Below, piece after piece: positions 21,061 through 58,724 of a stretch of 64,000 bases of DNA; the stretch's first letter is position 1; each line of letters begins with the position of its first letter. The translations under genes were made by a program, and so were the position numbers. The stretch is from Macrostomum lignano (taxonomy: Eukaryota), in the NCBI GenBank assembly GCA_002269645.1, contig NIVC01001547.1, forward strand, positions 207,025 through 271,024. The letters run 5' to 3'. The notes beneath the pieces were generated by a model. That model had not been told where the DNA came from, did not search any database, and saw nothing but the letters and a program-made list of their open reading frames with translations.

Positions 21061-21457
21061 AATTTCGTTACAATACGCATTAAAACTTTTAGACTGCAAT
21101 AAAATCGATATTTTTACGCATGGTATTTTGCTGTGTGGCGGGTGGGTGTTGAGCGGAATGGGAGCTGTTTCTTGTCATAGCGCGAGCGGCGTTGGTAGCC
21201 ACTCCCAGTTGGCTCTACCCCCCCCCCCCCCCAAAACGCTATTAAAACGAACGTGTTGAATAGCTGCATGAGAACTCCACCATAAGTCAAACCGGAACTT
21301 TCTTCAATGAACGGAATACGGTTTATCATGGCCTTGTCAAAGGAGACAAGAATTGCAACGATTGCCGAACTGGCGCTCTCGCTGTCATCTTAAATTTCTC
21401 GCTGTGTTTTATTAAAACACCTTGAAAACACAAAACTGCTAAACGTAAAAGTAGCGC

Positions 21458-24280
21458 AATGTCAAACATAGAAGAGCCACCATGTCAAACATATACGTGA
21501 CTTCATCTCAAACATTAAATAGCCACTATGTCAAACATAAAAGAGCCACCATTTCGAACATTAAAGAGCTACCATGTCAAACATAAAGGAGCCACCATGT
21601 CAAATATAAGAGAGCCACCATGTCAAACATAAAAGAGCCACCATTTCGAACATTAAAGAGCCACCATATCAAACATCTACGTGACTCCATGTCGAACATT
21701 AAAGAGTCACCATGTCAAACATAAAAGAGCCACCATGTCAAACATATACGTGACTCCATGTCAAATATTAAAGAGGCACCATGTCAAACATTAAAGAGAC
21801 ACCATGTCAAACATTAAAGAGCCACCATGTTGAACATTTAAGAATCACAATGTCAAACATTAAAGAGCCACCATGTCAAACATAAGAGAGCCACCATGTC
21901 AAACATTAAAGAGTCACAATGTCAAACATTAAAGAGCCACCATGTTGAACATTAGAGAACCACAATGTCAAACATAAGAGAGCCACCATGTCGAACATTA
22001 AAGAGTCACCATGTACAACATAAAAGAGCCACCATGTCAAACATAAAAGAGCCACCATGTCAAACATAAGAGAGCCACCATGTCAAACATAAGAGAGCCA
22101 CCATGTCAAACATAGAAGAGCCACCATTTCGAACATTAAAGTGTCACCCTGTCAAACATCGACGTGACTCCATGTCAAACATTAAAGAGCCTTCATGTCA
22201 AACATAAAAGAGCCACCATGTCAAACATAAAAAAGCCACCATTTCGAACATTAAAGAGCCACCATGTCAAACATCTACGTGACTCCATGTCAAACATAAG
22301 ACAGCCACCGTGTCAAACATTAAAGATCCACCATGTCAATATAAAAGAGCCATCAGGTCAAACATATACGTGTCTCCATGACAAACATTAAAGAGTCATT
22401 ATGTCAAGCATTAAAGGGCTACCATGTCAAACATTAAAGAGCCTTCATGTCAAACATAAAAGAGCCACCATGTCAAACATAAGAGAGCCACCATGTCGAA
22501 CATTAAAGAGTCACCATGTCAAACATAAAAGAGCCACCATGTCAAACATAAGAGAGCCACCATGTCAAACATAAAAGAGCCACCATGTCAAACATAAAAG
22601 AGCCACAATGTCAAACGTAAAAGAACCACCATGTCGAACATTAAGGATCTACCATGTCAAACATTTAAGAGCTACCATGTCAAACATAAAAAAGCCGACA
22701 TGTAGAACATAAAAAGCCACCACGTCAAACATGAACGAAACACCATGTCAAACATCAAAGAGCCACCATGTCAAACATATACGTGACTTCATGTCAAACA
22801 TTAAAGAGCCACCATGTCAAACATTAAAGAGCCACCATGTTGAACATTAGAGAACCACAATGTCAAACACAAGAGAGCCACCATGTCTAACATTAAAGAG
22901 TCACCATGTAAAACATAAAAGAGCCACCATGTCAAACATAAAAGAGCCACCATGTCAAACATAAGAGAGCCACCATGTCAAACATAAAAGAGCCACCATG
23001 TCAAACATAAGAGAGCCACCATGTCAAACATAAAAGAGCCACCATGTCAAACATAAGAGAGCCACCATGTCAAACATAGAAGAGCCACCATTTCGAACAT
23101 TAAAGTGTCACCCTGTCAAACAGCGACGTGACTCCATGTCGAACATTAAAGAGTCACCATGTCAAACATAAAACAGCCACCATGTCAAACATAAAAGAGC
23201 CACCATTTCGAACATTAAAGAGCCACCATGTCAAACATCTACGTGACTCCATGTCAAACATAAGACAGCCACCGTGTCAAACATTAAAGATCCACCATGT
23301 CAATATTAAAGAGCCATCAGGTCAAACATATACGTGTCTCCATGACAAACATTAAAAAGTCATTATGTCAAGCATTAAAGGGCTACCATGTCAAACATTA
23401 AAGAGCCTTCATGTCAAACATAAAAGAGCCACCATGTCAAACATAAGAGAGCCACCATGTCAAACATTAGAGAGCCACCATGTCAAACATTAAAGAGTCA
23501 ACATGTCAAACATAAAAGAGCCACCATGTCAAACATAAAAGAGCCACCATGTCGAACTTTAAAGAGCCACCATGTCAAACGTAAAAGAACCACCATGTCG
23601 AACATAAAAGAGCCGACATGTAGAACATAAAAAAGCCACCACGTCAAACATGAACGAAACACCATGTCAAACATCAAAGAGCCACCATGTCAAACATTAA
23701 AGAGCCACCATGTCAAACATAAAAGAGCAACCATTTCGAACATTAAAGAGCCACCATGTCAAACATTGAAGAGCCACCATGTCAAACATTAAAGAGCCAC
23801 TTTGTCGAGCTTTAAAGAGCTACCATGTCAAACATAAAGGAGCCGACATGTAGAACATTAAAAAGCCAACACGTCAAACATTAACGAGCCACCATGTCAA
23901 ACATAAAAGAGCCACCATGTCGAACATTAAAGAGCCAAAAGTGTAAAATATAAAGGAGCCACCATGTCGAACACTAAAGAGCCACCACGTCGAACATCAA
24001 AGAGCCACCATGTCGAATATTAAAGAGCCACCATGTCAAACAATAAAGAGCCATCATGAAGAACATTATAGAGTCAGTATGTCGAACATTAAGGAGCCAC
24101 CATGTGGAACATTAAAGAGCTACCATGTCAAACATTAAAGAGCCAGCATGCCAAACATTAAAGAACCACTTTGTCGAACATTAAAGAGCCACCATGTGGA
24201 ACATTAAAGAGCTACTATGTCAAACATTAAAGAGCCACCATGTCGAAACATTATTGAGCCACCATGCCAAACATAAAAAG
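21458..24280. repeat. 23-bp satellite (~120 copies) with an internal ~964-bp duplication
   Basis: Unit CACCATGTCAAACATTAAAGAGC; the same variant series recurs at 22164 and 23128. Confidence 0.95.
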
Positions 24281-27264: not shown

Positions 27265-28762
27265 CAGGTGGTCCAGGAAGGTCTCCCAGATTACAAACAG
27301 AGTTTTCTCTGCACTGGATTGATGAATTGGGCTGAAACTTGACCTGCTTAAACTTTATTCTGAATATGATTTTTTGTCTAAAAATCTTAGCAATTGCTAA
27401 AAAAATCACGAAGTTACAGCAGTTTTTCTAAAAAAACACCGTTTTCACTTACTGATGAGCACATTTCATTCCAGACTTACACGACTTACACGCCAGTTGA
27501 AAGATTTAAAATGGCATCCTGGCTGGATGAATTGAAGAGTCCGCTGTTGGTCCAGCGGCGATGGCGTCGTGAGTTCAATTTGGCTGCCAACCAACGCCCT
27601 CCAGATGCTAAGACCATCAAAGATGCACTTAAGGTGGCCTGTGAGTTTGGTTTGGCTCGACGACCAATTTCTGGGCGTCCACGGACTGCTCGTTCTGCTG
27701 AGAATGTGGAACAAGTTGTTCAACACTTCAAGGAGCGACCACAACAGTCAGTACGTCGTGCGAGTCGGGAGCTGAATGTTAGCCATCAGTCCATCCTTCG
27801 TGTGCTGGATAAGAGTGGCTTTCACCCCTATCGCATGCGCCGTCAACAGGCAATGAATGAGGCCGGCAATGAGGCGCGAGTGCTATTCGCAACTGATCTG
27901 CTGGAGATGTTTGACAGTGATCCTGAAATGTTAACCAACATCATTTTCTCTGATGAGGCTCATTTCTCCCTGCATGGCCGCAATAACACCTGGAACTCGC
28001 GGTATTGGGCCATTGAAAACCCAGATTTCTCTATCCAGATGCCCCTTCACAGACCACGCGTCTCATGCTGGGCTGGAATTTGGTCCCGCGGCATTGTTGG
28101 ACCTTTCTTCTGTGAGGATGCGCAGGGTGCAACTGTTACGTTGGATTCTGAGCGGTACGTGGAAATGCTGGATACAAATTTTCTGCCTGTGGTTCAGAAT
28201 TACGAGGCATTTGTTGCTGGTGACTTGTGGCTGATGCAGGATGGTGCTCCAGCCCACATCGGGCTTAATGTGCGTGAATGGATTCAGCACAACTTTGAGG
28301 AGCGCGAAATCGGACGCTATGAGACAATTCATTGGCTTGTACCTAGTCCTGATCTCAACCCTAAGGACTTCATTGTCTGGGGATGGGTGAAAGACGTCTA
28401 CCGACAGCCAGTGGACAGCCTGGATGAGCTAAGGCACGGATAACGCAGCTAATGCAGGATATTCCAGTGGACTTTGGTGTCAACAGCCTAAATAGCTTTA
28501 AGAAGCGCCTGCAGACTTGTATCGACAACAAAGGTCATCATGTGGAGCATTGACTAACAGTTGCATAGCAGATTGTGCTAAAACCCTACTGATTTAACAA
28601 AAAACTGCTGTAACTTCATGATTTTTTAAGCAATTGCTAAGATTTTTAGACAAAAAATATATTTAGAATAAAGTTGAAGCAGGTCAAATTTCAGCCCAAT
28701 CCATCAATCCAGTGCAGAGAAAACTCTGCTTCTAGTCCGGGAGACCTTTCTGGACCTCCCTG
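27265..28762 (+). mobile_element. Tc1/mariner-superfamily transposon, DD41D (rosa/Visitor-type)
   Basis: ~170-bp TIRs (CAGGTGGTCCAG... / ...CTGGACCTCCCTG) flanked by TA at 27263-27264 and 28763-28764. Confidence 0.93.
27511..28553 (+). pseudogene. DD41D transposase with a C-terminal frameshift
   Basis: FSDEAHF, LMQDGAPAH and SPDLNPKDF, with 41 residues between D2 and D3. The frame breaks near 28434; the alternate frame gives RITQLMQDIP...KGHHVEH*. Confidence 0.9.
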
Positions 28763-29885: not shown

Positions 29886-31833
29886 TTTGTCGTTGTCTCT
29901 TTCCCTCTCTCTCTTCTTTTTAGTTCGCTTTTTAAGTTATTTTGCGGTCTGTGCATCGGGAGCTGCGGATAACGGTGGTAGGGGAGATGGGGAGACAAGG
30001 AATATGAGGAGACATGGAGATGGAGGCTCAAAAGTAATTTGTGACAAAAAGAAAAAAGTAAAGAAACAGTTTGGGGTACGCTCGTAATTGGACCAAAAAG
30101 GGAATACTAAATTGCGATCATGCCAAACCTTTTTTGCTTTTGTCTTTTTGTCAAGAATTACCTTTGAGCCTGCTGCAATCGAGTGCTAACGTCTCGCAGT
30201 CTCATTATAAGCATTATTGTACATTCTATTCTCAAGTGAAATGTCTATTGCTGTATCACTAATAAATCTTTTTTATGGATCAGCTCAGTTTATATGCATG
30301 GTCAGGCATCGGTCGCTACTCGTCATGTCACTATAAATTTTGCAGCTCCAGTTGCCCCTGTGTAAGCAGTGCCATCCATCATGTTTTGCATCTACAATAA
30401 CTGGTATAATAAATCATCATAAGCAGTAGTTTTTATTCTTGTAAATTCCCAAATAAGTTTTGAGACTTTGCCGCAACAGTTCGTTCTTTATTCAATGTTA
30501 AAATGAACATTGTATACCAAAAACTCTGTCACAGAAACTCTTGTTTGAGTTTGAGATTTGTCTGAGAGCTCATTCAAACTCTGGTGAGACTGGTATGAAT
30601 TCAGTTCCCCGTTACACTATTTAGGGTTGCTATCAGGGGTGAGATTTTCACTGAATGCTTGAAATGGTCTCTCCTCCTTCCTCCACTTCTGTCCGCCCCT
30701 TCTATCCTCGTGCTCTCCCTCCTTCCCTTTCCTCTCTTCCTTCTCCTTTCTCATTTTAAGGAAGAGACCTGCACCAGTGATTTCGGGGAGGTGAAAAGGC
30801 GTCAACTTTTCATTTTATAAAAGCAAAATCTGAAGCAATTGTTCGCACTTTGCTGCTTCGATCCAACCAAAATACACTACTGTCAAGTTTTACCGCGAAT
30901 AGTAGCATCTTGTCTTGAACAGATTGTTTCGATCCCGTAGCCACACTTTCCCCACTAAGGCTTGAATTAGTGGCTCAATTGACGTGGAAAATGATTTACC
31001 CCCTTTCGGACCCGCGTAATATGCAGCTTAAACTGGGCACCCGATGATATCAGTAGCGAATGAACTCAAGGTCTTACTGGCCGCATCAGCCGCCGCCAAA
31101 GAATCCGCTGCCAAGTGCAGCACTGTACTGCTGTTGCTGCTGCTGCTGGTGGGGTCTTGTAGCCTATGGTTAATTTATCTGGTCAGGCAACGCTTTTGCC
31201 CCCATTCTGGAGTGTCTCTTTATTTGTGTGGCTATTTTAAATACACCCGTTCAAAGCCCTCTCTCTCCCTTGCTAAGTTTGGCGAAGCAACCACGAAATT
31301 ATCGTTTACACTTTCAAATTTCCAGCTAAGCCGCCACCGTTCGGCCTGTCTTAATGAGCGAGGTCACCGACGTGAAAAAAATTATCGTCAAGTAGGTCTT
31401 TTTTGAATGATGAATGTAGTTTAAATTCCCATAGAAGAGTTTTTACCTGTCGAACTTTTAGCTCATTCTTCTAAACTTTACGAAAGGAAGGTTAACACTA
31501 CAGAACTGTTGTCTTTATTATTGCTTTCAGCTCTTCTTGAAAGTAGTTCTGCCGATGATTTCAAATTTGAAGATGAACTATGTAAGTTTTACAATCAAGT
31601 TTTGCTAAAATTTTTCCTTGCAAACGAACTAAAATACGCGATGTACAGATTTTACACTGCTGAGACTGGTAGTTTCAAGTAGAATCCTCTAGCTATTTCT
31701 GCTTTGCTCAGAGCTGTGACCCTTCCTACTAGAGTGATAGAACTGAACTAAGCTACAATAGCAATGAAAACCCGCTGATCCCTTGTTGAATAACCAACTA
31801 TGAAAAACCCTCTGCCAAATAATGATATTTTAG

Positions 31834-34800
31834 GCTCCCGAAGATTGGCTCTGTTCTTCGACGCTGGCGGTGAGTCTGTGACGGCTGAGTACGCCGACTT
31901 TCTGACAGAGTGCAACTTTAACGTAAAGAGGAGCCTGGAACAGCAGTATGAAAGCAAACTGGAGTCGTGTCTACCCGACTCCGTGAATAACTTCGAGGTC
32001 CAGCAGCTAATTGTAGTCGTGATAGCTGGCAATGCTTTCATGAATGACGTCTTAGATTTCATGACAACGGATAAATTTCCCAACTGCCAAAACAGATGTT
32101 TATTATTTTGTCGCGCTGGTGAAGAAAGCCCGGATGACATGAAACTTGCAAACGAATTTTCGAATGCGAATTTTAAATACAAGTGTACAACTATCGCTTA
32201 CATCGTTGCTAAGGAACTTGAAAGCATACAGCGCTTCTATAAAAACTTTCTGGATGACTGCAAGTGCAAGTGGGAAGCTACAAGTATATTTTCTATCCTG
32301 GAGACGCTATCAATCGCTTACGAGTCCCTTTCTATGTATCATAGGGAAGGAAAGCTCGGTGGAGATTTCCTGCGCGACATTTTCAAATTTATCAGGGAAC
32401 CCAAGAGCAACCTTGATGAAGTTGATGCCTTACCAGCAGCATCAGAGCAGACTGCTCAAGACAAACCGACTGATTGGATGCGCGAGAATGCCTCAATAAT
32501 CTATCCTAATCGGCGCAATCCGAAAAAGCCTCGAGCGTTGGTCATCATCAACTATGACCGAGGAGACTCTCTATACTCTGCTCTGCAAGTTGACTGCAGC
32601 AGAGTTATGCGTATGCTAAAAAATCTTGGCTACATTGTAACGGACGTGCAAACCCACTCCAATGACGCCTTGAAAAGAAGGATCGAGCTTCTCTCAGGAG
32701 ATACTGAACACGGTGACTCCTGCATCCTTGTCGTGCTGTCCCAGTCTCAGCAGCAGCTGAGCAGCTTTACTGTCATGAAAAGCTTGGCTATTGGCGAAAA
32801 GCTCGCGGCCAAGCCCCGACTCTTTATTCTGCACGAGTGGGATGTCACAACACTGCAGACAGACTCTGTTACTGATGGTTTCAGCAGCGATACTTATGAG
32901 ATCGTTGAAGATGCTGTGGACGGTTTGCAGGCCTATTTTCGCAAGCATGATTCAACCATCAAGGTTCATCCACACAGCGGCATGGTGTTCGGTCGATCAG
33001 TTAGTAGCGATGTGACAAGAGCAGAGGGAAGCGCTTTTATTCAGACACTGTGCGAAACTTTCAGCCAGTATGGGCGCACAGAGGACGTGGCCTCCATGAT
33101 TACCATAATTAATGAGCACAAGCGACTAGAGAAAACTGTGCCCATGTGGTTTATTCAGACTAGCAAGCTCTTTTATATCACGGGAACAGACGGAATCCAG
33201 GGTAAGAGCCCTTGTTTAGCTCAGTGCATGTATACTTTTCAATTCGAACTTTGCCAAAAGTGACTTCAATTTCGGCAACACGATAAATTATGACTGTCAC
33301 TGTTACTGTCAAAGTGACTTAAAATTCTTTGTGATCAATATCATTGTAGTTCTGTAGCTCAGACTGCTTGTGCCACCGCCAACATTTTTTGGTGTTAGTG
33401 TGCGACACTGGTGGTGTAAATTTTGACCTAACGGTTCCTTCTAGTTGCCTTTAAACAATACAATCTTGAATGACAAATCTGTGATTGACTGCTTTGGCCG
33501 TGTTTACATTTATGTCGAGGTACTTCACTAGTCGTCTTCAGTCTCTCCTTGTTGTTGTCAAAATTGGTCACTTTTGCCAAAGTCGAAATTGAAAAGTTAA
33601 AACTATGCAGAAATCATTATTGCATAATCATTTGCACTATTTTGCTTTTAGCTACCGGTCAGGAGGTTTCGCAACAAAGTCTACAGAAGAAATCTAAAGA
33701 ACCTAAACAAAGTCTAGAGAAGAAATCTAAAGAACCTGAAAGCGCCAGAATTGGTAAGTGGCATATTAAATTATCGAGAAACACCTCTTACGACGTAGAG
33801 ATCAGATTCATGCGTTATAGTCATATAAAGATATGCGCAACATCTTTGCAAGACTACTCACTTCTAATTATATCTGTTCCGTTTTGCTGCGATGTCCAAA
33901 CATTTTTATCCTATCAAGAATTATTTCATCTAAAAACTTTCTGATAAGTACATGTATTTCAGAAAGATACGCTTGAGTTTTAAACATTATTAGATTCATG
34001 TATTAAAGAACACCTGTGCCTGTATAAGCCAATAAAACTCGCTAATCTCAGCAAAGCTCAGTTGTACTTGCACTTTTACGCTCGTATTTTCAGCTCGAAC
34101 AGAATTTGCGATGATTCTCACCGAAGGACAGTATGATGGGGCCAGAAACTATCAGATGTTTCTGGAGTATGCAGCCTTCAAAGTGCTCTTCGATTACACG
34201 GATGGCAATTCGAGCTCAATCAAGACAGCCATCAGGCTTCCAAAAGAAACTGAAGGAAATGTTGTCCTTTATCTAATTGTACGCACGCATCGCAACGACA
34301 ACGTCTTGCAAGAAATAGTCGATGAACTTTCTAAACAGCAATCTTCTCAAAAGTGCAGCAGTAGCATTTTGCTTATTCTTTGCGAAGTGTCCGAGTCTGA
34401 AGAGAATTTCGCGAACACTCAGATGCCAGAGGAGCTACCCGAGAAGTTCAGCGTTGTCAGAGTTTGCAGGAATCGGTGCGGCGTGATTGAATTTCTGGAC
34501 TCCCTGCTGGAATCTCCCAGGAAGAACATCTCTCTCAATGGCAGCCTTGTGGTTGGTAGAGATTTTTCCTGCCACTCCTGCCATCACGGAATAATGCACT
34601 GCAAAGTCAATGACGAAAACCCAGGCTGGAGGAAGAGAATCACTTGGCTTGAAAACTTTTATATAGAAGAGAGTTCATCGCACCCAAATCTGTCTTCAAT
34701 TGACGTTAGTGACGACACGCAGACGAGACCAGCAATAAGAGGATCTCTCCGATTAGAGAGTTTCAGAAGCGAATGGAATGCACCTGGATTAGATACTCAA

Positions 34801-35556
34801 GAGTGCAAGGCTGTAGCCCTCATCGTTCACAACGTTGTCTTCCAGAAAAAGGAACTATCTACTCGGTTCGGAAGTCAGTACGACTGCCAGCGAATGGCTG
34901 ACACTTTGCTCAGGCTTGGCTACTCAGTGAGCATCAGGTCGAATCTCACCAAAGTAGAAATCGAAAGCGAATTAGACATGTTTTGCAGTGACGCACGACA
35001 CGGCAGCTCAGTCGTAGTTGCTTTTATGTCTCACGGATGTCTCGGTGAAGTAGTTGGTTTCGACGGCGAATCAGCGAAGGAAAGTAAAATTCTAAAACGA
35101 ATTTCCAAAGGAAACCGCACAAGTGAAAAGCAGCAATTGGTCATCTTCCAGAACTGTCTAGACCCTGGTCGATTGCCTAAATCAGAGCTGTCGTTTTTTC
35201 CTGGCATGATCGTCGCTCACTCGACTTCGCCGAATGAAAGCAGCTATCGAATGACAGACAGAGGCAGTCGGTTCATCCAGTGTCTGTGCACTGTTCTCGA
35301 CCTGTTCGCCGACACGTGCGACATTGCGTCAATGGTTCCTATCGTTAATTATGTGGTGCAAAACGCTACTTTTTATATGGGCATCAGCCAGCTGCCCTGG
35401 TGGTCTGTGCAGACAAGCAAGAAATTTTGGATTCGAGTCAATGAGCCTCCTCAAAGCAGTCGTGAATCGCGCCATCAAGCCAATTCAGCTAGGAACCAAA
35501 CAACGAATGACTGCAGGGTTCAGGTGACGGAACTTCTTCAAAAAATGCGGTTGTAA
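31834..35556 (+). CDS. Caspase-family gene A: pseudo-caspase module + linker exon + His/Cys-intact caspase module (exons 31834-33201, 33652-33753, 34094-35556; 5' exons unresolved, candidate 31531-31581)
   Basis: All junctions are GT-AG, phase 1 and in frame. Module 1 has VVLSQS and LHEWD at the catalytic positions; module 2 has FMSHG, FQNC and the p10 motif AHSTSP...YR...GSRFIQ. Confidence 0.8.
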
Positions 35557-35929
35557 TAATCTACGCAGAGGCAGTTTATCAATTTGACTATTGTGGTGAC
35601 TGAATAGGTTTAATTGCTTATATTGTAGCTACCAGTGGCAATATTTTAATTCTTACATTTTTTTCTTAGCGGTTCAAAATCTGATGAATTTCTGTGAGAG
35701 CGGTATATATGATTTTAACATTCAAACCATAAAAAATTTACTATTGACAACTGTTGGGACAATTAAAGATAACGCCTGTTTATAGGCGTTTGTAAATTTG
35801 TTTTACTTTGAAGACTTTTTACACAAATATTAAATTAATAAACTGCTAGTTAGCTTCTTGGTTAGAGGCAGGGGGCTGTTTACCCTGGTGCACTTTAAGC
35901 GACATTGTCACACAATCAGCGAGAGGCAT

Positions 35930-36195
35930 TACTGCCCATTCCGCCGGCTCCCTAAGCAGGCACACAAGCAAGCGCGCGGATATGTATACAGTCATTCGTA
36001 AAGGCACACACGCACACAGGGGTGTACAGTGGCTTTAACAATTTTTATCGCTAGGCATGTACACTTTACTGTGTCTTGAGGTTGGCCCTTAAGGCCGTTA
36101 CTTGCATGAGCAGAGCCAAGCTGACTGCACTTGGAATCGAGTATGGACCGCTGGCACATCAGAACGCCGCGTTAGACCACAAGGCTACGGCCCCC
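35930..36195 (-). mobile_element. tRNA-derived SINE, near full length
   Basis: Head GGGGCCGTAGCCTTGTGGTCTAACGCGGCG...ACTCGATTCC (A- and B-box-like), followed by the shared body. Confidence 0.7.
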
Positions 36196-37067
36196 GTAAT
36201 AAATTACTACGTAGTATAATAACATAATTATTACAAAAGGAGCGTGTTTCCGTAAGTGCTTCGATGGAACAAATTTGTTTTTATTGTTTTAATGAAAGAC
36301 GTTAGACTGACCATTCTAAACAGTTTAAGCCAGTCTAAGTTAAAAACAGCAGCAGAAATGCTCTCGCTATAACTAACCGTTGCCGAATTTTTAATTGAGA
36401 AAAATGTTATCCTAGTGTATGTTTTCATTATTAAAACTAATTATAAATGATTACAAAGTTTTCCTGATTTTTAATGTTTTATTGAAAGAAGTATAATTAG
36501 CATTGGAGTACGAGTTGTATTTAATGTAATCGATCTTTTGAATTTGAATGTATCAAAATCGCAAACTGCGACTGGCCCTCGATAGTAGTGCATCACTGCA
36601 TTAGATTTTCCTCCAGCTCTGATTATTTTATTTATAGTAAACATAAAACTAACAGGCTCGTAAACTGCTGATTCCTAATTCAATTGTTTATTTAAATGTG
36701 AACGATTATCCAATCAAGTACAACAACTAAGTTCAAATAAATCAAAGGAAACTAAGAGTTTTCCGCTTGTCACCGAATGTCTGCTTTTTTTATTTTGACC
36801 AACGTTTAGTATAACTTAGCTAGTTAATATATAGGTGTATCTACAAGTGTATAGGAGTACGAGTGCATATAGTAGTATAGAAAGTATATATACATGGTTA
36901 CTAGCTTAGCTAGCTTAGAATTAGTTTTACATTACAAAAAAGCTTTATGGGATATTTTAACTTTCCATCCAACAATCCAAATTTCCCCCTTTCAGATGAA
37001 TTACAAAAAAATTGTTATATAACTAAGCCTTATCTGGTATTCGAAGAAACGATCCAACTCAGTATCG

Positions 37068-40000
37068 ATGGCTGATTTTCCTGAGACATTTGAGACCGAA
37101 AGCCCAGCTACTAGTAAGTGCAAACCTACAATAAAATTATTTAGCAAATAAATTCGAACAAACATAGGCTGATTGATTCCTCTGAGTAATTTTTCCCACA
37201 TTTAAATTTTCAGTATTGCATGAAATTTCAACAGCTTCAGGTCTGTTAGATGTTTAAAACCAAATTTATTACTAATTTAAAATCATTCTCCAATACTTTT
37301 AATAAGCTGCATATGCTTCATAATTGCAGAAACTACAGAAGCAAGTCGTGCTACTCGCAGTGCATTTGGTAAGATGCGCGCATAGGGGGGTTTGGGGGGG
37401 GGGGGGCAGAGCTGTTCTGCGGTGAACGCGTCGGATCAATATTGGCCAAGAAAGATTTGTCATGCGATTTAAACCCCCGATGACCAGTACTCAACACACA
37501 GAGAGTGTGCATGTTGGACGATTAGACAGTCAAGGGCTGCTGTACACCCTATTTTTTAAGTTTCTTTCAAAAACTTACAGGAGCCATTCAAGATGTACAG
37601 GCAGGATCGAAGCTTCCCAGCTGGCAGGGAACATTCGGTGAGCACTTCTCAAGGACACATTAAGTAGGCTATCTTTTAGTTGTCCTTTGCACTTCAACTA
37701 TAACATGCAGTTTTGTAAAATTTTTACAATTGTAGCTTATCAGAGGCTACTGCTAGTATTCGCTGATGAGACTACAGCGAAGATGGACAGCTACATTGAA
37801 TTTATGAGCTCTCGTTGCGGCTTTTACACTGAGAAGCTCGCCCTGAACAGTCACCTTGCCGAATCCGAGACACTATCTCGAGCACCAGTCAGGCAGATTG
37901 TCTGCCTAGTAATTTTCTCCGCTTCGCAGCCACAGCGCTACATGAAGGACTACCTAGATTTTCTGAACCAATTTGACGAATCCGTGGATCAGCTACTGCT
38001 GTACTGCAACTTGTCCGAGACAGAGACCCAAATCGATCAGGATCTGCGAAATCAATTCTGCAGCAGTGCCTTTCCTTATCGAAAGTCTAGCATTGCTTAC
38101 ACTTTCGGAACTTCCTATGGAGTCGGACGATTTTTTGATAAATTTAAGAACGATTGCAACTTGAAATGGAATCGTACTGTTGGCCTTTGTGACGTCCTGG
38201 AATCACTTGATATGGACCAGTCGTCTGAACTTTACATTAAAAAGCCTAGGAGCGAAAAGTGCTTCTTCCCACGCGAAATATTTTACCCTTGCAGCTCACA
38301 AGAACTGATCAAAATAGCCGGCATTGAGTCCTTCACCAACCGAGTTGACCCGGATACTCTGGCGTTATACGGTGATTTTATATATCTGAACAGCCGCATA
38401 CAAAAGCCGCAGGCCTTGATCGTTCTAAACATCAAACTAGAGAGCGGCATGACAAACAAGTCAATGCACGCAGACTGGAGGCGCCTTCTTTGGCTGTTTG
38501 ATAAGCTCCAGTTCGAGGTCAAAGATGTTCAAACAGACGCGTCAAGCTGCAGTCAGCTTGAAGAATGCGTGAAGACTTTTGCTGATTCTGAGTTGCACGG
38601 TGACTCCTGCTGCCTGGTTGTGCTCTCCGAAGGCTGGCTAGAAAGCAGCTGCATTGACAGCATCAGTAAGAGCATGGCCTTCGGAAAGCTTATCAAGGGT
38701 AAGCCGAGGCTGATCATCATTCAGGAGTACCAACCGAAGTCCTCAGAAGCATCGGATGCTGCGCCGAAGTCGCTCCCCCAATTCCTGCCTGACGCAGTGG
38801 AAGCGATGCGATTGCAGTTCAGAAACGACAAGCCTGAGGTCAGAGTCCATCCGCTAAGCGGAACCGTCTGGTGTCAGTCCGAAGCGTCGGACACCGAAAG
38901 CGACAATGCGACACCGCTGATTGGATCCATCTGCGAGACTTTCATCAATCACTCAGCCATCGAGGATTTGGTTTCGATGATTTCAATCATCAACGAGAGA
39001 CTGCAGGACGCCCCACCCACTTGGTGTGTGCAAACTGCCAAACTTTTCTATGTTGGAAATACTGAGTTCACAGGGAGCGGAAGCGCAAGTAAGTTTGTTT
39101 GAGTTTTTGAAAAAATAAGCAGATTGTTTAATAAAGTTTTCTGTCAAAATTTTCAATTCCAGGCAAGGCTCAATCCGAAAATACCCCTGAAAATCCTGCA
39201 CCTGCAACCGATCCGTTAGCGACTTTGCAGACAATGCAAGGCTTAGCAGCAGAGTCGGACAAGCCGCGTCCCATTCTCGATCAAAACAGTAAGAATGAAC
39301 TAAAAATTTGAGACAAAAATCGATTTGGAGGTCCCAAAATTTTTGAAGCTATAAACTTAATGAATTTCAGATCGCCCTGGAGTAGCACTGATTCTCACTG
39401 AAGGCTTGTTCGACAAAGTCCGAGATTATCAAATGTTTCTGGATTTTGCTGGCTTTCAAGTAATCTCGGAACGAATCGATGGTATTAGCGCTTCTTTGAG
39501 AGAAATTGTGACTTCATCGGCCGCTCAAAGCCCGCTAGCAGTTGTGCTGATCGTTAAGAAGCACCAGGCCGGAGCCGGCGTAGATGATGTAATTGCGTGC
39601 ATGTCGGAGACTGCAACCAAGCACGAAAACAGTTCCCTACTCATCTACTTTGAGATACTAGGTACTGATGAGCTGCCCTCTGAGATTCGCTTACCGGATG
39701 AACTGCCAGAGAAGTTCAGCATGGTTTGCTACCAGGGCACTCGAGACCGAATCAATCTCTGCCTTGACTTATTTCTAAAAACGCCGAGGAAGAATCTTAA
39801 AAGCAGTCCAATTGTTGGTTACAATTTTGAGAAGCTACGTACTAGGAAAAAAGAGCCAAAAATGATTTACCAATCCAGCGATAGCAATCCTGGTTGGAAG
39901 CTGACACCCAAATGGCCAGAGAGCCGAAATATCAGGGGTGACGACATCATGAAACAGGACTTATTCCGCACAGCCAGTATGCGAAAGAAATGGTTCCCAA

Positions 40001-40800
40001 AGAAACCTATTCTACAGAATGTCACTATGCAGAGCAGGGCTCTAATCGTTCAGAATATTGTCTTCAAATCCGGCGAGATCAGATTTGGCACCCAGAACGA
40101 CTGTCAGAGGCTGACGGAATGTCTTACAGGCTTGGGGTTTCGAGTGTCAATCAGAACGAACCTCACGGCAGCTGAAATCTTGCAAACTGTGCAGCTCTTT
40201 GCTGGTGCCAACGACCACGGCCGCTCCTGCATCTTGGCAATCATGTCCCATGGATATCTGGGAAAATTTTTGGGATGCGACGAAAGGACTGTGAAAGAAG
40301 CAGATATTATTGATCAGCTGAGCAAAGGCAGTGGGCTTCAGGGTAGATCAAAGTTTGTTGTGTTTCAAGCGTGCAGGCCATTGGAAGAACCACATTCCAG
40401 CAGCTCAGCAGAGCGATTGATTAGACCCTATCCCGACATGGTGATTTCTCACTGCACCTCCCCAGAGGAGTTCGGTTATCGAAATCGCTTCGAAGGTAGC
40501 TGGTTCGTGCAGAGCCTGTGCTCCGTGCTTAATGAATGCGGAGCCGATGCGGACATCCTATCAGTGATAACTGCGGTGAACTACATGGTTTTGGCCTGCT
40601 TCAATCGGTCCGACTGTAAAGATGAGCGAACTCAGCAGCCGTGGTGGCTGCTGCAAACGAGAGGCGCTTTTGTGCTCGGCAGCGGCACACCAATGAAAGA
40701 AATCGGCGACACCAATCTTAGTTCAGCTGCACCTGCCGGGAGCCGAAAGTGTCGGGCAAGCGTTTGGAAAAAGTTGGAGGCCTTTTTCGCGAGGTGGTGA
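37068..40800 (+). CDS. Caspase-family gene B, ~1016 aa (exons 37068-37113, 37330-37368, 37581-37637, 37736-39088, 39163-39288, 39371-40800)
   Basis: Five GT-AG introns, all phase 1; the summed CDS is 3051 nt. Module 1 has VVLSEG and IQEYQ (dead); module 2 has IMSHG and FQACR (dyad intact). Paralogous to gene A throughout. Confidence 0.82.
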
Positions 40801-42911: not shown

Positions 42912-44608
<1,697 letters not shown>

Positions 44609-45079: not shown

Positions 45080-46749
45080 CTATAAGTGATTCTCCGACAC
45101 CTCTCCGGAGAGAGGAATTCGGCTTGACTTGGGCTGCTGTTGATCCACCCGATCCGCCATCGCTTCTGCCGGCCCTTCAAATAGACTCTGCGTACTAACA
45201 AGGAAAAACTTCTTATGCGTCTGCACTGTCCAGCATGGCAGCTGTAGTGACAGAACTTCTCCATTCAGTTCAGGCTGTTTAAATCCCCGAACCATGGCGA
45301 AGTTGATCCTGGTGAGCATGGAGACCAGATCCTCTTTATGGGCGAACTCGTAAAAGGTTGCGCACAGGGCTAAAATGAAGCGACTGCCGTAACTACTTCG
45401 AAAAGCGAAGTCCCCAGGCGATGTCGAATGGGCCACGATCAGCCCGCTCTGCTCAGGCGGCGGCTCAGATCCGCTGGCAGGATTGCCTTGGTGAATGCCC
45501 ACCTGGATGGCCATCTCCGTCATCATCGCGCAGACTCTCTCCGAGTTCGCCGCCAGTTTTCCGGCGACGGCCTCGCTCAAATCGATCCGACAGGCTTGAA
45601 TGAGAACCAGTCTGGGCTTGGCTCTGACACCGGCGCCTCTGGACATCAGTTGGAGTATTTCAAACTCTTCAACAATGCCCAATTTTTCCCCTCTTCTGTA
45701 GTCTGTGCCGCAGATAATGCCGAGGCTACCGTGCGACATGATAGCCAGGACGCAAGCGTCTCCATGGCTGTCATCGTTGGCAAAGTTTCTCACCGCCTCC
45801 CGCATCTGCTCAGCTGTCAGGTTAACCATTTCTGTCACACTGAACTGCATAAGAGTCAGCACGTGACGCAGGTTTTTAAAATCCATGTAGCTCTCGGGTC
45901 GATTCGAGGTTGGAAGCACGAAACTTACGTTATGAATTATCAGAGCTTTTTTAGTAGCACGATTTCCAATGTAGTAAACCAGATCGTCAATCGGATTGGG
46001 ATCAATCTTCAGTCTCTCGACTGTTTCGGCGTCCAGCTGCTTCAGGTGCGATCCGTCGCCAATAATTCTGGCGAACTCCTCCCTGTCCTTCAGCATTTTC
46101 ACCGGCAGCCGTGGCTGGATGAACTCGCCAGTCAAGCCATTCTGCGTCTTCAACCTGAACTTATCGAAAACTTCGCTCTCGATTTCGTACTGAATCAACT
46201 CGCCGAGACCCCTGCTGTGCCACTTTCTCTTTTTTAGATCAGCGAGCAGCTGCAGGAAGGTCCTCACTTCATCTCGCATCTTCACGGTGATGCTCATGAG
46301 CACCATGTTGCGCAGCTTCCCTCGACACTCGTCTGGCCTCATCAGCTTAACGCAATCGGCTTTCTCTTCGGCGTCCGTGTTGGAGATTCTGCAGAATATA
46401 AGCAGCTTCTGCGTTGAGTCATTTGCAGCCAAAAGCAGTTTGACAATTTCGTCAAGATCGGCGGGTTCGTCAGACTCAAGCAGTACGACCACAACCAGCT
46501 GTTTTGCGTCCTTCGCTACGTCCTCGATTCCATTTTTTATGTCGCTAAAATCGGTCGATGGTACATAGTTGACAATGAATCCGCAGCGGTCCAAGAAGCG
46601 CTCATAGTCGCGAATTTCTAAGCAGCAGTTGACTTCCTGATTGTAAGCCTGGTTGAATATAACAGCCCTGCATTGTCCACTGAATGAAGGCAGCTGGACG
46701 GGTTTCGGCGTTGGCGTTGTTTGCGGACGCGGTAGCAAAATTTGTTCGA
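45080..46749 (-). CDS. Caspase-family gene C (single module-2-type unit), convergent with genes A and B; 5' exons unresolved
   Basis: Phase-1 acceptor at 46750-46751. KALIIHN, IMSHGSLG, LIQACRI and AHSTSPGDFAFRSSYGSRFI. Confidence 0.88.
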
Positions 46750-48631
46750 CTGTAATTTAAACACATTAAGAATATTTTTTTTAAAACTATTGATGAACTT
46801 ACATGAACATATAACTTATAGTGTATGTGCACTGCTCAGTTTTTGGTCTGTGGACCGGCTACTTCAAACTACATGTAGTACCATTATATAGCATATAGTA
46901 TGTACGAGTATATTGCAATAGTTATGTGATCGCAGATACCATTTTATATCTGCTGTACGCTCGTATACTGCTACCTGTACCAGCATTTGAAGTGCTTTGT
47001 CAGTGCCCCAGCAGCCCACACTGCACCAGGCCGATACTGCGCGACCCAACGTCAAAGTAGGCAATCTCTCTACCCGGAGCGTCCTAATTCCCGGAGACCA
47101 CTCGCTATATAATACCAATAGTAACAGTGGGCTGAGGGCCTGGGGCTTTGAAATCTTCACTTACGCTACAAATTCGTACCTTAATGTAAGTAAACCTCGA
47201 CATACTGCTAAAAAACAAGGGGTATTGCAAAATTTTCGCAGAATGTGTCTACTGCAAACGACGGAAAATATCGAAATTCTGAGCTGAGAAATTCTAGCTA
47301 AAACTCCATGCACATCTGCTCTATTTTAAATGATGAACTGTAAAGCAAAGGACTGAGTTTGGTGCCACTGTCACTCAGGTAAGAGTCATTCGAATTTCGC
47401 TTAAAAGTATTTCAAATAGCTAGTCTAAAGATTCATTGACAACCTCAAAGATATTAAAAAATTAATATCTGTGAATATAAATTTAGAACGGCTTCGACAT
47501 AAATAAAAACGAAAGCGTACCTTCGCCTTCGGTTTCGTTTGGAATATTTGTGGGAGCAGTCGATCGTTTAGGGGCATCGCAAGCCTCGGCCATAGTGGGT
47601 AGCCTCGGATGCTATATAGCTTGTTTTGTGGCTTCTGCTTGAAAACACAGCAACAAGAATGCATAGCTACAGTGTATAGCTGCTTTTTATAGAACCTACA
47701 GTTAGAGGCTACGTGTATAGAGCCCATTTATGGTGCCAAACGTAAATTGTGACGTCTGTTTCTATAATTAAACAGTTCTGGAAAAGAGATTTGCTAGATA
47801 GATACGCTTTATATGGCCTAAGGGCCCAGATATTCTGCAGTTTAATACAGACTGCTTTGCATGATATGGAAGATACGAATTCAAGAAATATACGAGCGTA
47901 CGATGCAATTTACGAAACTGTAATACACTACCGCTACAGTTTGACCAGTGCAACTTGCATTCGTTGCGGATGTGTTAGTTAAAGCATTGATAAATAAATC
48001 CGAAGATATAGCTACACAAATTAACTTCAGGGGCACATTGTAGCTGTACCTGTTATTAGCCATTTTAAAAGAAAAGAGTCGAGTTACAGCTTCTGCATGA
48101 TCCCTTTGGTTTAATTTGTTTAATCAAATTCCTTAGCCTAATTAAGAAGCTAACGTTATGGAGCTGATTTTTGGGTGCCTTAATACTTAATTTGTTGAAA
48201 TTTGTTGAAAATTTAACTCAATGAAAGTACAAGTTAAGGAATATTTCACTTAGATAGAAATATAACTGCTAATTTGATAAATAAATTGCTAAGAGTTCTA
48301 GGACATATTGACAGAATCGTTATCTAGTTGATAACAATTTCTAGAAGCGAAGAATGTTTAAGTAGTTATTGTGACTTCAGCACCGATACATAAGCGAGTA
48401 CATACATGTAAGGCTTTTTGTCCAAGCTTGATTCACAATTGACTCAAAGTTATCAAAGTGACGTACTTGAATGCAAACTTTCATAATCGGATTTCTTTAT
48501 TTGATAAAATTGTCTCTTAGCAAAAGTCAAATCATAGCGTTATCAATTTTAGAACATAGTCATATTTCGCGCATTGTCGAGCTGTCTTACATTTTTAATT
48601 CATTCTCTTTGCATTTTTCATTCTCTTCTGT

Positions 48632-53675: not shown

Positions 53676-54702
53676 ATGGACACAGATAACGACCGCTTAT
53701 ATTTTATAGGAGAAATTGTAGACACTTTAGATTTGGATGATAATAAACATAGCCACACAATGTTAAAAAGATTGGATCGATTAGGTAAAAAGTTTGACTA
53801 CGACATCGATACATTTAAACTCGCAGCAAAATATGCACAAGAAGGAAGGCCAATATCCTTTAAGAATCGCGGCAGAAATTATAGGTTAACAGACTCCGAT
53901 GTGAAATTTTTAATGGAGACTCACACTAAAAAGGACGGCGGATTACTACCCATTCTACCGCTTCTTTTAGGACTTGGCGCAGCTGGAGCAGTCGGTTTAG
54001 CCGGAAAAAGAATTCATGATAATGTAAAACAGCTAGGAGAGTTAAGAGCGAAACAGGGGGAATCTTGCCCCTTGCAGCTTTGCTCCCAATAATTTTTGCA
54101 GGAATTGGAGCAGCTGGAGGAGTTGCTGGTGGAGCAGCTGGAATTGCAAAAGCAGTAAATGACAAAAAAGCTGCGGACGAAAAAGCTAAAAGAGAGGCCG
54201 AATTTCAAAGACAGCAAATAACGCAGGACGCACAATTTAAACAAAAACTTATCGATACAATTAATAGTAGTTCAGCAACAGCTGAGCAAAAAAGAAATGC
54301 AGAAGCTAGGTTATCAGCTGGAAAAGGTTTACTCTTGCAAGGATCAAATCATGGCAATGGTTTACTTTTACAAGGAACAACCCAAGGAAGTGGAGTTGTC
54401 GCAGATAAACTACATGAATTTGGCCAAACTTGATGAAAAACGGGTGAGAAAGCTAAAGGATTTTTTGACAATATTGGATCCAATTTTAGACCAGCTGTTC
54501 AGAAAATTTTTAATAAATTAGGAAAAGATTTTAACATCATTGAAAAACACGACGGAAGCGGATTATATCTCGAAATGAGACCAAAAGCAGGTTCAGGAAT
54601 TTTCTTAAATTCAAACGTTTTGGGCAATGGATTACTGTTACCAAAAGCAGATCTCGAATAGGCTCCTGGGGGGTGGGTCAGGACACCAAAAACACAAAAT
54701 TA
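53676..54702 (+). pseudogene. Polinton Gly/Ala-rich membrane-active/core protein, interrupted
   Basis: KDGGLLPILPLLLG..., a G-run frameshift near 54058 (restores KQGGILPLAALLPIIFAGIGAAGGVAGGAAGIAKAVND), in-frame TGA TGA at 54431-54436 and TAG near 54658, and repeated GxG(L/I/V) motifs. Confidence 0.7.
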
Positions 54703-54745
54703 AAAAATCAATAATTCAAACATTATATAAATTTTATTCTATAAA

Positions 54746-57700: not shown

Positions 57701-58724
57701 AAATATTAGAGATAGAACCCAATTCCATTTAGAAAAGGATATTGATAAAGCAAAGAAATATTTCTCAAAACCTAACTTTAAAGACTTTATAAAATTTGAT
57801 GATAACTTTATGGGTATTCATATGAGAAATAAAACAACAAAATTTCTTAAACCAATATTTATTGGAATGGTTGTTTTAGATTTTGCAAAGCTGGTAATGT
57901 ATGAATATTATTATGATGTTATAAATAAAACATGGCCAGATAACTATCCAATATATGCAGACACCGACAGTTTGGTATTTAAGGTTGAAACAGAGGATCG
58001 GGCAAAGCCCGCGAACCAAAGGTTCGATGTCTATAAAGATATGGAAAAAATTAAGGATACATTGGATACCTCCGACTATCCGGATAACCATCCTTTAAAA
58101 TCAGATCAAAATAAAAAAGTTGTACTTAAAATGAAAGATGAATTAAATAGCAAAATCATAACCGAGTTTATAGCAATAAGATCAAAATGCTATGCATTTA
58201 AAGTTTTAGGACAGGAGGGAGAGGTAAAAAAAATAAAAGGGGTATCAAGAGCAGCAGTAAAAAAGATAACATTTGATGATTATAAAAACGTACTTTTAGA
58301 TTACCTTAATACAATTGAAAATTATCATGCTCCACAATATCGATTAAATTCAGATAAGCATCAGATGTTTGTCATCGAGACAGATAAAAAAACATTAAGT
58401 CCATTTGATGATAAAAGATATTTAGATGATAAAATTAAAACATATCCATATGGTTTAAAAGAAGAGATAAAAAATATGATAAAAGATAAAAAACAAAAAG
58501 AAGATATAATAAGTAAATATAATGAATACAAAGCGGCAATAAATAATTATTATTACGATTGTGATTGTGAATCCGAATGTGATTGTGAATATAATACATT
58601 TCTAGAATATGAAAAAGATATAGATAATTATTATTCAACATTTCCAAAAGAACTTAAAAAATTAAATAAGGAAAAAGTCTTGAATAACTGGAAGAGATTA
58701 ACAGAAAAATTACTTATCGGATAA
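54746..58724 (+). pseudogene. polB: Protein-primed family B DNA polymerase with an endonuclease VII-like insert
   Basis: Exo motifs IYADFEA, FHNGSGYD and YLKADV; pol motifs YLDANNLYG, KLMNNAFYGK and YADTDS; CFMC...REHCHLTGNYRGAACRSCN. TAG at 56780 with compensating indels; frameshift near 57550. Confidence 0.93.

What the first reader, a model, noticed from the sequence alone, without database searches (positions are those of the whole stretch)
31834..40800. Single-chain pseudocaspase-caspase fusion proteins (top candidate for a new system)
Seen: what the ORF track lists as four separate ORFs splices, through in-frame phase-1 GT-AG introns and a short low-complexity linker exon, into two ~1000-aa paralogs. 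In each, the first caspase module lacks both catalytic residues (SQS/HEW in A; SEG/QEY in B) yet is conserved between paralogs; the second keeps His and Cys (SHG with QNC or QACR). Established: caspases are activated by dimerisation, and dead homologs such as cFLIP modulate caspase-8 as heterodimers in trans. Inference: these are covalently tethered FLIP-like/caspase heterodimers, with no CARD or DED recognisable in gene B. I do not know a described protein with this layout.
Basis: partly seen in the sequence, partly recalled or inferred. Interest (0 to 1): 0.85.

Follow-up and report, generated by a model that had tools for sequence, protein, structure and literature searches.

The report
Flatworm tandem pseudocaspase–caspase genes
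Two neighbouring genes of the flatworm Macrostomum lignano each encode one long protein that joins a dead caspase to a live one, a real but not unprecedented layout already described in corals (Caspase-X) and mammals (caspase-16), here evolved independently and with an extra domain in front of each caspase.

Summary
Four ORFs at 31.8-40.8 kb all carry caspase (Peptidase_C14) domains. They join through GT-AG phase-1 introns and short linker exons into two ~1000-aa paralogs, A and B. Module 1 of each has lost the catalytic His and Cys; module 2 keeps them and the Asp-binding Arg/Gln/Arg. The window is Macrostomum lignano. RNA-derived GenBank models from sister copies (PAA75222.1, PAA47018.1) use the same junctions, so the single chain is supported. 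Module 1 is under purifying selection (pN/pS 0.44), like module 2 (0.42).

The novelty claim fails. Coral Caspase-X (2016, cDNA and cell assays) and mammalian caspase-16 (2025) have the same dead-plus-live layout, and both were given the same cFLIP/caspase-8 interpretation.

Three things are new here:
- The flatworm family arose independently. Its dead domains resemble its own live domains, not the coral dead domain.
- Each caspase domain is preceded by a ~200-aa alpha/beta domain. Among the best 150 of 5,249 hits in 1.84 billion representatives, only M. lignano proteins carry it. It looks like a degenerate caspase p20 half (hhalign 61%, weak Foldseek hits).
- A single-module active paralog, gene C, lies 4 kb downstream.

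Pairing of the two domains in cis is plausible but untested (full-length AlphaFold2 pTM 0.49). This is a new variant of a known kind.

The parts
31355..31392 (+). Gene A exon 1 (MSEVTDVKKII...). This copy has an 11-nt deletion relative to sister copy L004, which shifts the frame into exon 2.
   Evidence: tblastn of the P0001 N-terminus; sequence; alignment with L004
31531..31581 (+). Gene A exon 2 (..LLESSSADDFKFEDEL-C), AG acceptor and GTAAGT donor, phase 1
   Evidence: matches P0001/P0007 '...FEDELCSRRLALFF'
31834..33201 (+). Gene A exon 3 = module 1. N-domain about 31839-32450; pseudocaspase domain 32532-33200. His site VLSQSQ at 32733-32750; Cys site ILHEWD at 32826-32843.
33652..33753 (+). 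Gene A linker exon (34 codons, Lys/Ser/Glu-rich, internal SL(Q/E)KKSKEP repeat), phase 1-1
   Evidence: identical junctions in P0001 and PAA47018.1
34094..35556 (+). Gene A exon 5 = module 2. N-domain 34096-34700; active caspase domain 34813-35553. FMSHGC at 35023-35040; IFQNCL at 35143-35160; stop at 35554-35556.
37068..37113 (+). Gene B exon 1 (ATG; MADFPETFETESPAT)
   Evidence: colinear with PAA75222.1
37330..37368 (+). Gene B exon 2
37581..37637 (+). Gene B exon 3 (AIQDVQAGSKLPSWQGTF)
37736..39088 (+). Gene B exon 4 = module 1. N-domain about 37738-38340; pseudocaspase 38413-39087. VLSEGW at 38620-38637; IIQEYQ at 38716-38733.
39163..39288 (+). Gene B linker exon (42 codons, Pro/Ala/Thr/Gln-rich), flanked by introns of 74 and 82 nt
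   Evidence: same exon in PAA75222.1
39371..40800 (+). Gene B exon 6 = module 2. N-domain 39373-39950; active caspase 40036-40797. IMSHGY at 40240-40257; VFQACR at 40360-40377; stop at 40798-40800.
45080..46749 (-). Gene C main exon: a single module of N-domain (46120-46690) plus active caspase (45083-45976). IMSHGS at 45742-45725; LIQACR at 45604-45587. Corresponds to GenBank PAA66621.1.
47521..47593 (-). Gene C exon 1 (MAEACDAPKRSTAPTNIPNETEGE), GT donor, phase 1

Best explanation
The region holds a tandem cluster of a Macrostomum lignano caspase family not seen outside this species in the searches run here. The basic unit is a module of about 470 aa: a ~200-aa alpha/beta N-domain followed by a caspase domain. 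Gene C carries one active module.

In an ancestor of genes A and B the whole module was duplicated inside one gene. The upstream caspase domain then lost His, Cys and the P1-Asp-binding arginines. The downstream one kept the His-Cys dyad and the Arg/Gln/Arg S1 pocket. The gene later duplicated into A and B, now 30-36% identical.

Each gene is transcribed and spliced into one mRNA encoding one ~1000-aa chain: N-domain, pseudocaspase, a disordered low-complexity linker, N-domain, active caspase.

Shown:
- the gene structures and the catalytic status of each domain
- the single ORF, and its agreement with RNA-derived models of sister copies
- purifying selection on the dead module
- origin independent of the coral and mammalian analogues

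Inferred:
- Caspases are active only as dimers paired through strand beta-6.
- The dead domain therefore most likely serves as a built-in partner and regulator of the live domain. This would make activation independent of DED/FADD-type recruitment, which flatworms lack.
- In coral Caspase-X, removing the dead domain increased killing. By that result the dead module is more likely a brake or specificity modifier than a relic.
- The N-domains probably add regulatory or oligomerisation surfaces. They may themselves be degenerate caspase p20-like folds.
For: Caspase domains and catalytic status:
- Peptidase_C14 in all four ORFs; similarity to caspase-3 with the SHG and QxC motifs aligned.
- The five-module alignment shows the dyad lost only in A1 and B1.

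Single chain:
- GT-AG in-frame junctions.
- The same junctions occur in P0001, PAA47018.1 and PAA75222.1.
- The GenBank annotation is built from RNA-seq and cut at experimentally mapped trans-splice and poly(A) sites (PMC5730564).
- Two other loci also give dead-plus-live models: PAA73902.1 and PAA86652.1.

Selection and copy number:
- pN/pS against homeolog L001 is 0.44 for module 1 (p = 2e-4) and 0.42 for module 2, with no stops.
- The cluster is conserved in three assembly copies.

Independent origin:
- blastp matrix: flatworm dead domains score 39-68 bits against flatworm live domains, 22-24 against the coral live domain, and nothing against the coral dead domain.

N-domain:
- It was found only in M. 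lignano proteins, among the best 150 of 5,249 hits in 1.84e9 representatives.
- The AlphaFold2 core is an alpha/beta sandwich.
- Foldseek hits include drICE and procaspase-3.
- hhalign against caspase domains gives 61%, score 36.2, against 11.5 +/- 2.2 for shuffled columns.

Precedent for function:
- Caspase-X and caspase-16.
- Flatworms lack FADD (PMC11463336).
Against: - No direct evidence that the two domains contact each other. The full-length model has pTM 0.49 and pLDDT 59, linkers fall below 50, and no contact map is available.
- A ~250-aa N-domain and interdomain stretch sits between the dead and live caspase domains, unlike the ~25-aa spacer in Caspase-X. Cis pairing is therefore geometrically possible but not favoured by a short tether.
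- No transcript or protein data for this exact copy.
- Gene A in this window has an 11-nt deletion in exon 1 that breaks the canonical start.
- At homeolog L001, gene A is annotated only as a 318-aa C-terminal product, so shorter transcripts may exist.
- M. lignano has many polycistronic precursor transcripts.
- pN/pS of 0.4-0.5 indicates only moderate constraint.
Confidence: 0.6

Rival explanations
1. The protein is a single chain, but the dead module does not pair with its own live domain. The active site would form by conventional homodimerisation of two live domains from two chains. Alternatively, dead:live pairing occurs in trans between chains or between paralogs A, B and C. The dead module and N-domains would then act as scaffold, decoy or recruitment surfaces.
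For: - A long (~250-aa) N-domain and linker separates the two caspase domains.
- The beta-6 motif P-x-W-x-x-Q-T-x-K-x-F is invariant in all five modules, so any pairing is sterically conceivable.
- Single-module active gene C sits next door as a possible trans partner.
- The caspase-16 authors list intermolecular dimerisation as an alternative.
Against: - The tethered arrangement is retained in at least five diverged paralog groups, including one (PAA86652.1) where the live domain follows the dead one directly after about 20 residues.
- In Caspase-X, deleting the dead domain changed activity.
Confidence: 0.25
2. The modules are really separate proteins. The fused models come from polycistronic precursor transcripts, and module 2 is released by spliced-leader trans-splicing or translated from an internal start.
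For: - About 7% of M. lignano assembled transcripts are multi-gene precursors.
- An A+B read-through model exists in UniRef (P0011, 1821 aa).
- A2 has an ATG at 34111, five codons into the module.
- Homeolog L001 has only a 318-aa product called for gene A.
Against: - The linker exons keep one continuous frame in both genes, and in the sister-copy models of L001 and L004.
- Module 1 has no stop before its donor site.
- B2 has no ATG until inside helix 1 of its N-domain.
- The TBONE pipeline cuts at mapped SL sites, yet it left PAA75222.1, PAA73902.1 and PAA86652.1 as dead-plus-live single products.
Confidence: 0.1
3. Module 1 is a decaying remnant of a tandem duplication with no function, kept only because it is spliced into the mRNA.
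For: - Loss of all catalytic and S1 residues.
- Only moderate constraint: pN/pS 0.5 for the dead caspase domain.
- Weaker Pfam scores.
Against: - pN/pS is significantly below 1 and equal to that of module 2.
- Reading frames are intact over the divergence of A and B (30% identity) and in further paralogs that share specific motifs: HGDSC-L-V-LS, KPRL, VHP-SG, ED-SMI-IINE, P-W-QT-KLF.
- An insertion specific to module 1 is conserved between A1 and B1.
Confidence: 0.05

Closest known systems
Coral Caspase-X (Acropora millepora AmCaspase Xa-Xd; GenBank KR351289; Moya et al. 2016, PMC4715348; tandem expansion in Acropora, PMC7783167)
   Same: - One chain with an N-terminal caspase domain lacking His and Cys and a C-terminal active one.
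- No CARD or DED.
- Tandemly duplicated gene family.
- Interpreted as a cFLIP/procaspase-8-like pair.
   Different: - Independent origin. Each lineage's dead domain is closest to its own live domain, with no detectable similarity between the flatworm and coral dead domains.
- In Caspase-X the two domains are adjacent, about 25 aa apart, and the protein is 721 aa.
- Here each caspase domain carries its own ~200-aa N-domain, and the chain is ~1000 aa.
- Caspase-X has cDNA and cell-death assay data. The flatworm proteins have none.
Mammalian caspase-16 (Eckhart et al. 2025, PMC12198278)
   Same: - The prodomain arose by duplication of the caspase-domain exons and lost the catalytic site.
- The C-terminal domain is active.
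- The authors propose an intramolecular FLIP(L)-like pairing.
   Different: - Vertebrate lineage, not orthologous.
- One duplication only.
- No extra N-domains.
- No linker exon.
cFLIP(L):procaspase-8 heterodimer
   Same: A dead caspase paralog partnering a live caspase domain. This is the functional analogy for regulation by a pseudoenzyme.
   Different: - cFLIP and caspase-8 are separate polypeptides brought together by tandem DEDs at the DISC.
- No DED is present here.
- Flatworms lack FADD.
Uncharacterised predicted double-caspase proteins in other animals (e.g. Drosophila gunungcola LOC128254441, Leptopilina boulardi LOC127281088, Thrips palmi LOC117648328)
   Same: Two Peptidase_C14 domains in one predicted chain, with the catalytic Cys replaced in one of them.
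   Different: - Unverified gene models.
- The order of dead and live domains varies.
- None carries the N-domain.

Membership tests
Caspase family (MEROPS C14A / Pfam PF00656) | Significant match to the Peptidase_C14 profile | tested here: met
   All four ORFs and gene C score above the 21.4-bit gathering threshold (25-119 bits for the four ORFs; precomputed PF00656 for gene C).
Caspase family (MEROPS C14A / Pfam PF00656) | Catalytic His-Cys dyad (SHG ... QxC) | tested here: met
   Met in A2 (SHG/QNC), B2 (SHG/QAC) and C (SHG/QAC). Not met in A1 (SQS/HEW) or B1 (SEG/QEY), which are therefore pseudocaspases.
Caspase family (MEROPS C14A / Pfam PF00656) | Asp-specific S1 pocket (equivalents of caspase-3 Arg64, Gln161, Arg207) | tested here: met
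   Read from the alignment with human caspase-3 (sequence recalled from memory). R/Q/R are present in A2, B2 and C. In A1 and B1 Arg64 is replaced by Tyr or Lys, and the Arg207 region is divergent.
Coral Caspase-X | Two caspase domains in one chain, the N-terminal one lacking His and Cys | tested here: met
   definition from PMC4715348.
Coral Caspase-X | Common descent: sequences cluster with the coral Caspase-X clade | tested here: not met
   blastp matrix with AmCaspase-Xa, using OCR text of Additional file 5. No hit between flatworm and coral dead domains. Each dead domain is closest to the live domain of its own lineage.
Coral Caspase-X | Dead and live domains directly adjacent, with no intervening domain | tested here: not met
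   In A and B, a linker exon plus a ~200-aa N-domain and interdomain stretch lie between them. Paralog PAA86652.1 does have adjacent domains.
Coral Caspase-X | Dead domain lowers the killing activity of the live domain | not testable with these tools
   Needs expression assays.
cFLIP-like regulators | Tandem death effector domains N-terminal to a pseudocaspase domain | tested here: not met
   No DED or CARD in Pfam scans of the ORFs or N-domains at E <= 10. The 5' exons add only ~35-50 low-complexity residues.
TIR domain (label given by UniRef to gene-B fragment P0012) | Match to TIR sequence profiles or TIR fold | tested here: inconclusive
   - No Pfam TIR hit at E <= 10.
- No PDB sequence hit.
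- No TIR among the top 50 Foldseek PDB matches of the N-domain model.
- That model is only pLDDT 65, and the PROSITE profile behind the UniRef name could not be run.
Caspase-hemoglobinase fold (for the N-domain) | Profile or structural similarity of the N-domain to the caspase p20 region | tested here: inconclusive
   - hhalign with 5 sequences: probability 8%.
- hhalign with 9 against 175 sequences: probability 61%, E = 8e-5, beta-1 to beta-4 in register. Shuffled controls reached at most 20.9 and the reversed control 20.5, against 36.2.
- Foldseek: drICE and procaspase-3, probability 1.0 but E about 1e-2 and TM 0.4, listed among flavodoxin-like folds.

The most novel reading that the evidence does not exclude
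Each chain contains four caspase-fold domains made by two nested rounds of internal duplication: a degenerate p20-like N-domain, a pseudocaspase, a second degenerate N-domain and a live caspase. On this reading the family is a Macrostomum invention. It supplies its own dimer partner and regulatory surfaces, an adaptor-free caspase activation device in a lineage that has lost FADD/DED signalling, possibly used in fast-evolving stress or immune responses.
Probability: 0.25. Interest if true: 0.6.

Novelty: new variant of a known kind. Interest (0 to 1): 0.45.

Why it matters
Caspases need a dimer partner to be active, and how that partner is supplied decides when a cell dies. A dead-plus-live caspase in one chain has now arisen independently at least three times: in corals, in mammals and in this flatworm. 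That suggests a recurrent evolutionary solution for built-in control of caspase activity.

M. lignano is a transgenic, RNAi-amenable regeneration model. It could therefore test experimentally what the dead domain does, which has not been done in vivo for Caspase-X or caspase-16.

The lineage-restricted N-domain, possibly a further degenerate caspase fold, is an undescribed prodomain type. A 2024 survey of lophotrochozoan caspases did not report it.

Tried and rejected
- The word-indexed homolog search returned only near-identical M. lignano proteins, both for the full-length query and for the profile. It was not useful for distant relatives.
- Exact look-up of P0001 found no contig.
- Pfam on the isolated N-domains found nothing. 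The N-domain profile against PDB sequences found nothing.
- A TIR identity for the N-domain, suggested by a UniRef name, was not supported by fold search.
- I looked for a paralog with the dead and live domains in one exon, which would prove fusion without relying on splicing. In PAA86652.1 an intron also sits at the junction.
- A phase-0 start exon for gene B using the ATG at 37593 was rejected. It is out of frame with the 37736 acceptor. The correct exons came from PAA75222.1.
- The ATG at 31800 as the normal start of gene A was rejected. It lies in an intron and is closed by TAA in both sister copies.
- The full-length AlphaFold2 model did not resolve domain packing.
- A literature search for the locus tags found nothing. 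The supplement of the 2024 caspase survey is not held.
Full report
**1. What is in the sequence**

The interval contains four long + strand ORFs: 31800-33263, 34111-35556, 37687-39102 and 39406-40800. Each matches Pfam Peptidase_C14 above the curated threshold, with E = 2e-10, 1e-29, 2e-5 and 3e-34. The second ORF aligns with human caspase-3 structures through the SHG and QxC motifs.

Joining the exons closes the reading frame in both genes.

Both module-2 reading frames extend upstream of any ATG into conserved sequence (..ARTEFAMILTEG.. and ..NRPGVALILTEG..). B2 has no ATG until inside its first helix. Module 2 therefore looks like a continuing exon, not a separate gene.

**2. Organism and transcript support**

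The spliced gene A protein is 94% identical over 99% of its length to a 1016-aa Macrostomum lignano protein, UniRef A0A1I8J0.. (P0001). Its sequence crosses both junctions exactly as predicted...TDGIQ|ATGQEV...ESARI|DRTGFAMILTEG.

GenBank PAA47018.1 spans the same gene A junctions. GenBank PAA75222.1 (1017 aa) is the full-length homeolog of gene B with the same linker exon.

The GenBank annotation of assembly Mlig_3_7 was built from RNA-seq and de novo transcripts. Transcripts were cut only where spliced-leader or poly(A) sites were mapped experimentally (PMC5730564). These models therefore count as indirect transcript evidence for the fusion, obtained from sister copies that are 89-97% identical to the window.

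Using PAA75222.1 as a guide, gene B in the window has six exons: 37068-37113, 37330-37368, 37581-37637, 37736-39088, 39163-39288 and 39371-40800. All are GT-AG with phase-1 introns, giving 1016 aa.

Gene A has two short 5' exons (31355-31392 and 31531-31581) ahead of 31834-33201, 33652-33753 and 34094-35556. In this copy, exon 1 carries an 11-nt deletion relative to sister copy L004, which puts the canonical start out of frame. The in-frame ATG at 31800 lies in the intron, and it is open only in this copy; the two sister copies have TAA there. How, or whether, this copy of A is translated from its 5' end cannot be decided without RNA data.

**3. Anatomy**

All four modules, plus a fifth in a neighbouring gene, align end to end over about 470 residues.

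Each module has three parts:
- a ~200-aa N-domain
- a poorly conserved connector
- a caspase domain

Catalytic status:
- A1 and B1 have lost His (to Gln or Glu) and Cys (to Trp or Tyr). They have also lost the Arg equivalent to caspase-3 Arg64.
- A2, B2 and C keep His, Cys and the Arg/Gln/Arg set that binds the P1 aspartate.

Identities are 30% for A1-B1, 36% for A2-B2 and about 20% between module types. The internal duplication and the loss of catalysis therefore preceded the A/B gene duplication.

Gene C (47593-47521 and 46749-45080, minus strand) is a single active module and corresponds to PAA66621.1.

No CARD or DED is detectable.

**4. Is module 1 constrained?**

The window was compared codon by codon with homeolog L001. 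No segment has a stop, and pN/pS values are:

| Segment | pN/pS | One-sided Fisher p |
|---|---|---|
| Module 1, all | 0.44 | 2e-4 |
| Module 1, dead caspase domains only | 0.50 | 0.016 |
| Module 2, all | 0.42 | 3.6e-7 |

Further diverged M. lignano paralogs keep a dead module followed by a live one:
- PAA73902.1
- PAA86652.1
- PAA60871.1
- probably PAA69179.1

The refutation condition 'module 1 evolves neutrally' is therefore not met.

**5. The N-domain**

- Pfam and PDB sequence searches find nothing.
- A profile of the five modules was searched against 1.84 billion representative proteins. Of the 150 best hits listed (5,249 in all), only M. lignano proteins matched the N-domain. Scores then drop from about 390 to 185 bits, where ordinary caspases begin.
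- An AlphaFold2 model from five sequences (pLDDT 65, pTM 0.69) gives a beta-alpha-beta sandwich.
- Foldseek matches to the PDB are weak (E >= 4e-3). They mix flavodoxin-like proteins with drICE and procaspase-3. No TIR domain is in the top 50, although UniRef names one gene-B fragment 'TIR domain-containing'.
- Profile-profile comparison of nine N-domains with 175 caspase domains gives probability 61%, E = 8e-5 and score 36.2. Strands beta-1 to beta-4 align in register, with LLIFC opposite LIQAC. Column-shuffled controls give 11.5 +/- 2.2 (maximum 20.9 in 100 runs), and the reversed control gives 20.5.

I read this as suggestive, not proven, evidence that the N-domain is itself a degenerate caspase p20-like fold.

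**6. Mechanism**

Established knowledge: caspase domains are active as dimers paired through strand beta-6, and the dead paralog cFLIP(L) modulates caspase-8 as a heterodimer.

The beta-6 motif P-x-W-x-x-Q-T-x-K-x-F is invariant in all five modules, so the dead modules retain the pairing strand. By inference, the dead domain is most likely a built-in partner or brake for the live domain.

This step is not shown. The full-length AlphaFold2 model has pTM 0.49. The four domain cores are moderately confident, but the linkers fall below pLDDT 50, and the tool reports no contacts.

The long spacer between the two caspase domains leaves room for the rival in which pairing occurs between chains or with gene C.

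**7. Comparison with what is known**

The layout has been described before.
- Acropora Caspase-X has an inactive N-terminal and an active C-terminal caspase domain and is cDNA-verified. It kills HeLa cells more strongly when the dead domain is removed, and it was modelled on the cFLIP/procaspase-8 heterodimer (PMC4715348). It expanded by tandem duplication in Acropora (PMC7783167).
- Mammalian caspase-16 has a prodomain derived from duplicated caspase exons without a catalytic site. Its authors make the same FLIP(L) analogy (PMC12198278).
- Predicted double-caspase proteins with one dead domain also occur in several insects and other animals.

The flatworm genes are not members of the Caspase-X family by descent. 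Their dead domains are most similar to flatworm live domains (39-68 bits) and show no similarity to the coral dead domain. The coral dead domain in turn is closest to the coral live domain (92 bits).

They also differ in having an N-domain before each caspase domain.

A 2024 survey of lophotrochozoan caspases reported only a kinase-prodomain caspase as unusual in M. lignano, and no other unexpected prodomain in flatworms (PMC11463336). No paper mentions these locus tags.

**8. Verdict**

- The single-chain reading is well supported.
- The tethered-heterodimer mechanism is plausible and has published precedent, but it is untested here.
- The claim of an undescribed layout is wrong.

This is a third, independent and structurally more elaborate instance of a known kind, in a genetically tractable animal. 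Interest is moderate.

Noticed in passing
window 31355-31392 and 31800-31834: Gene A exon 1 has an 11-nt deletion relative to sister copy L004, which frameshifts the canonical N-terminus. In the same copy, the intronic ATG at 31800 is in frame and open, whereas both sister copies have TAA just before the acceptor. This could be a crippled copy or an alternative start.
   Followed up: partly
window 45080-47593 (-): A third paralog, gene C, is a single N-domain plus active caspase module on the opposite strand (GenBank PAA66621.1). It resembles the unduplicated form of the unit duplicated in A and B.
   Followed up: yes
window 35400-37637; protein P0011: A UniRef model of 1821 aa joins gene A to gene B. 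It splices from within the last exon of A to the third exon of B. This may be a read-through or precursor transcript, or a prediction artefact.
   Followed up: partly
window versus L001 (NIVC01000896.1) and L004 (NIVC01004605.1): The A-B(-C) cluster is present in at least three copies of the Mlig_3_7 assembly at 89-97% identity. This fits the hidden polyploidy of the DV1 line.
   Followed up: partly
window 21441-24278: A 2.8-kb satellite of a 23-bp unit (AAACATAAAAGAGCCACAATGTC, about 123 copies, 80% matches). It explains the strong AT and GC skew there and is also present at the start of L004.
   Followed up: partly
window 42912-44608: A 1.7-kb (ATAG)n microsatellite (about 428 copies) between gene B and gene C. 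It explains the GC-skew peak at 42-44 kb.
   Followed up: partly
window 8080-10772 (-): A GC-rich (0.58-0.61) ORF of 796 aa with aspartyl protease, reverse transcriptase, RNase H and integrase zinc-finger domains. This is an LTR-retrotransposon pol.
   Followed up: partly
window 13946-15094 (-): An ORF with weak, below-threshold matches to reverse transcriptase and GIY-YIG nuclease domains. This looks like a Penelope-like element fragment.
   Followed up: no
window 27394-28443 (+) and 60989-62107 (-): Transposase-like ORFs. The ORF at 60989-62107 has Mos1-type HTH and DDE transposase domains. The ORF at 27394-28443 has only a below-threshold Tc3-type transposase HTH hit.
   Followed up: no
window 54000-60000: A markedly AT-rich block (GC 0.28-0.32) with several long + strand ORFs. 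One, of 678 aa (54746-56782), has a recombination endonuclease VII domain. It could be a distinct mobile or virus-like insertion.
   Followed up: no
window 1-2000: Strong negative GC skew (-0.35) at the start of the window. The cause was not examined.
   Followed up: no
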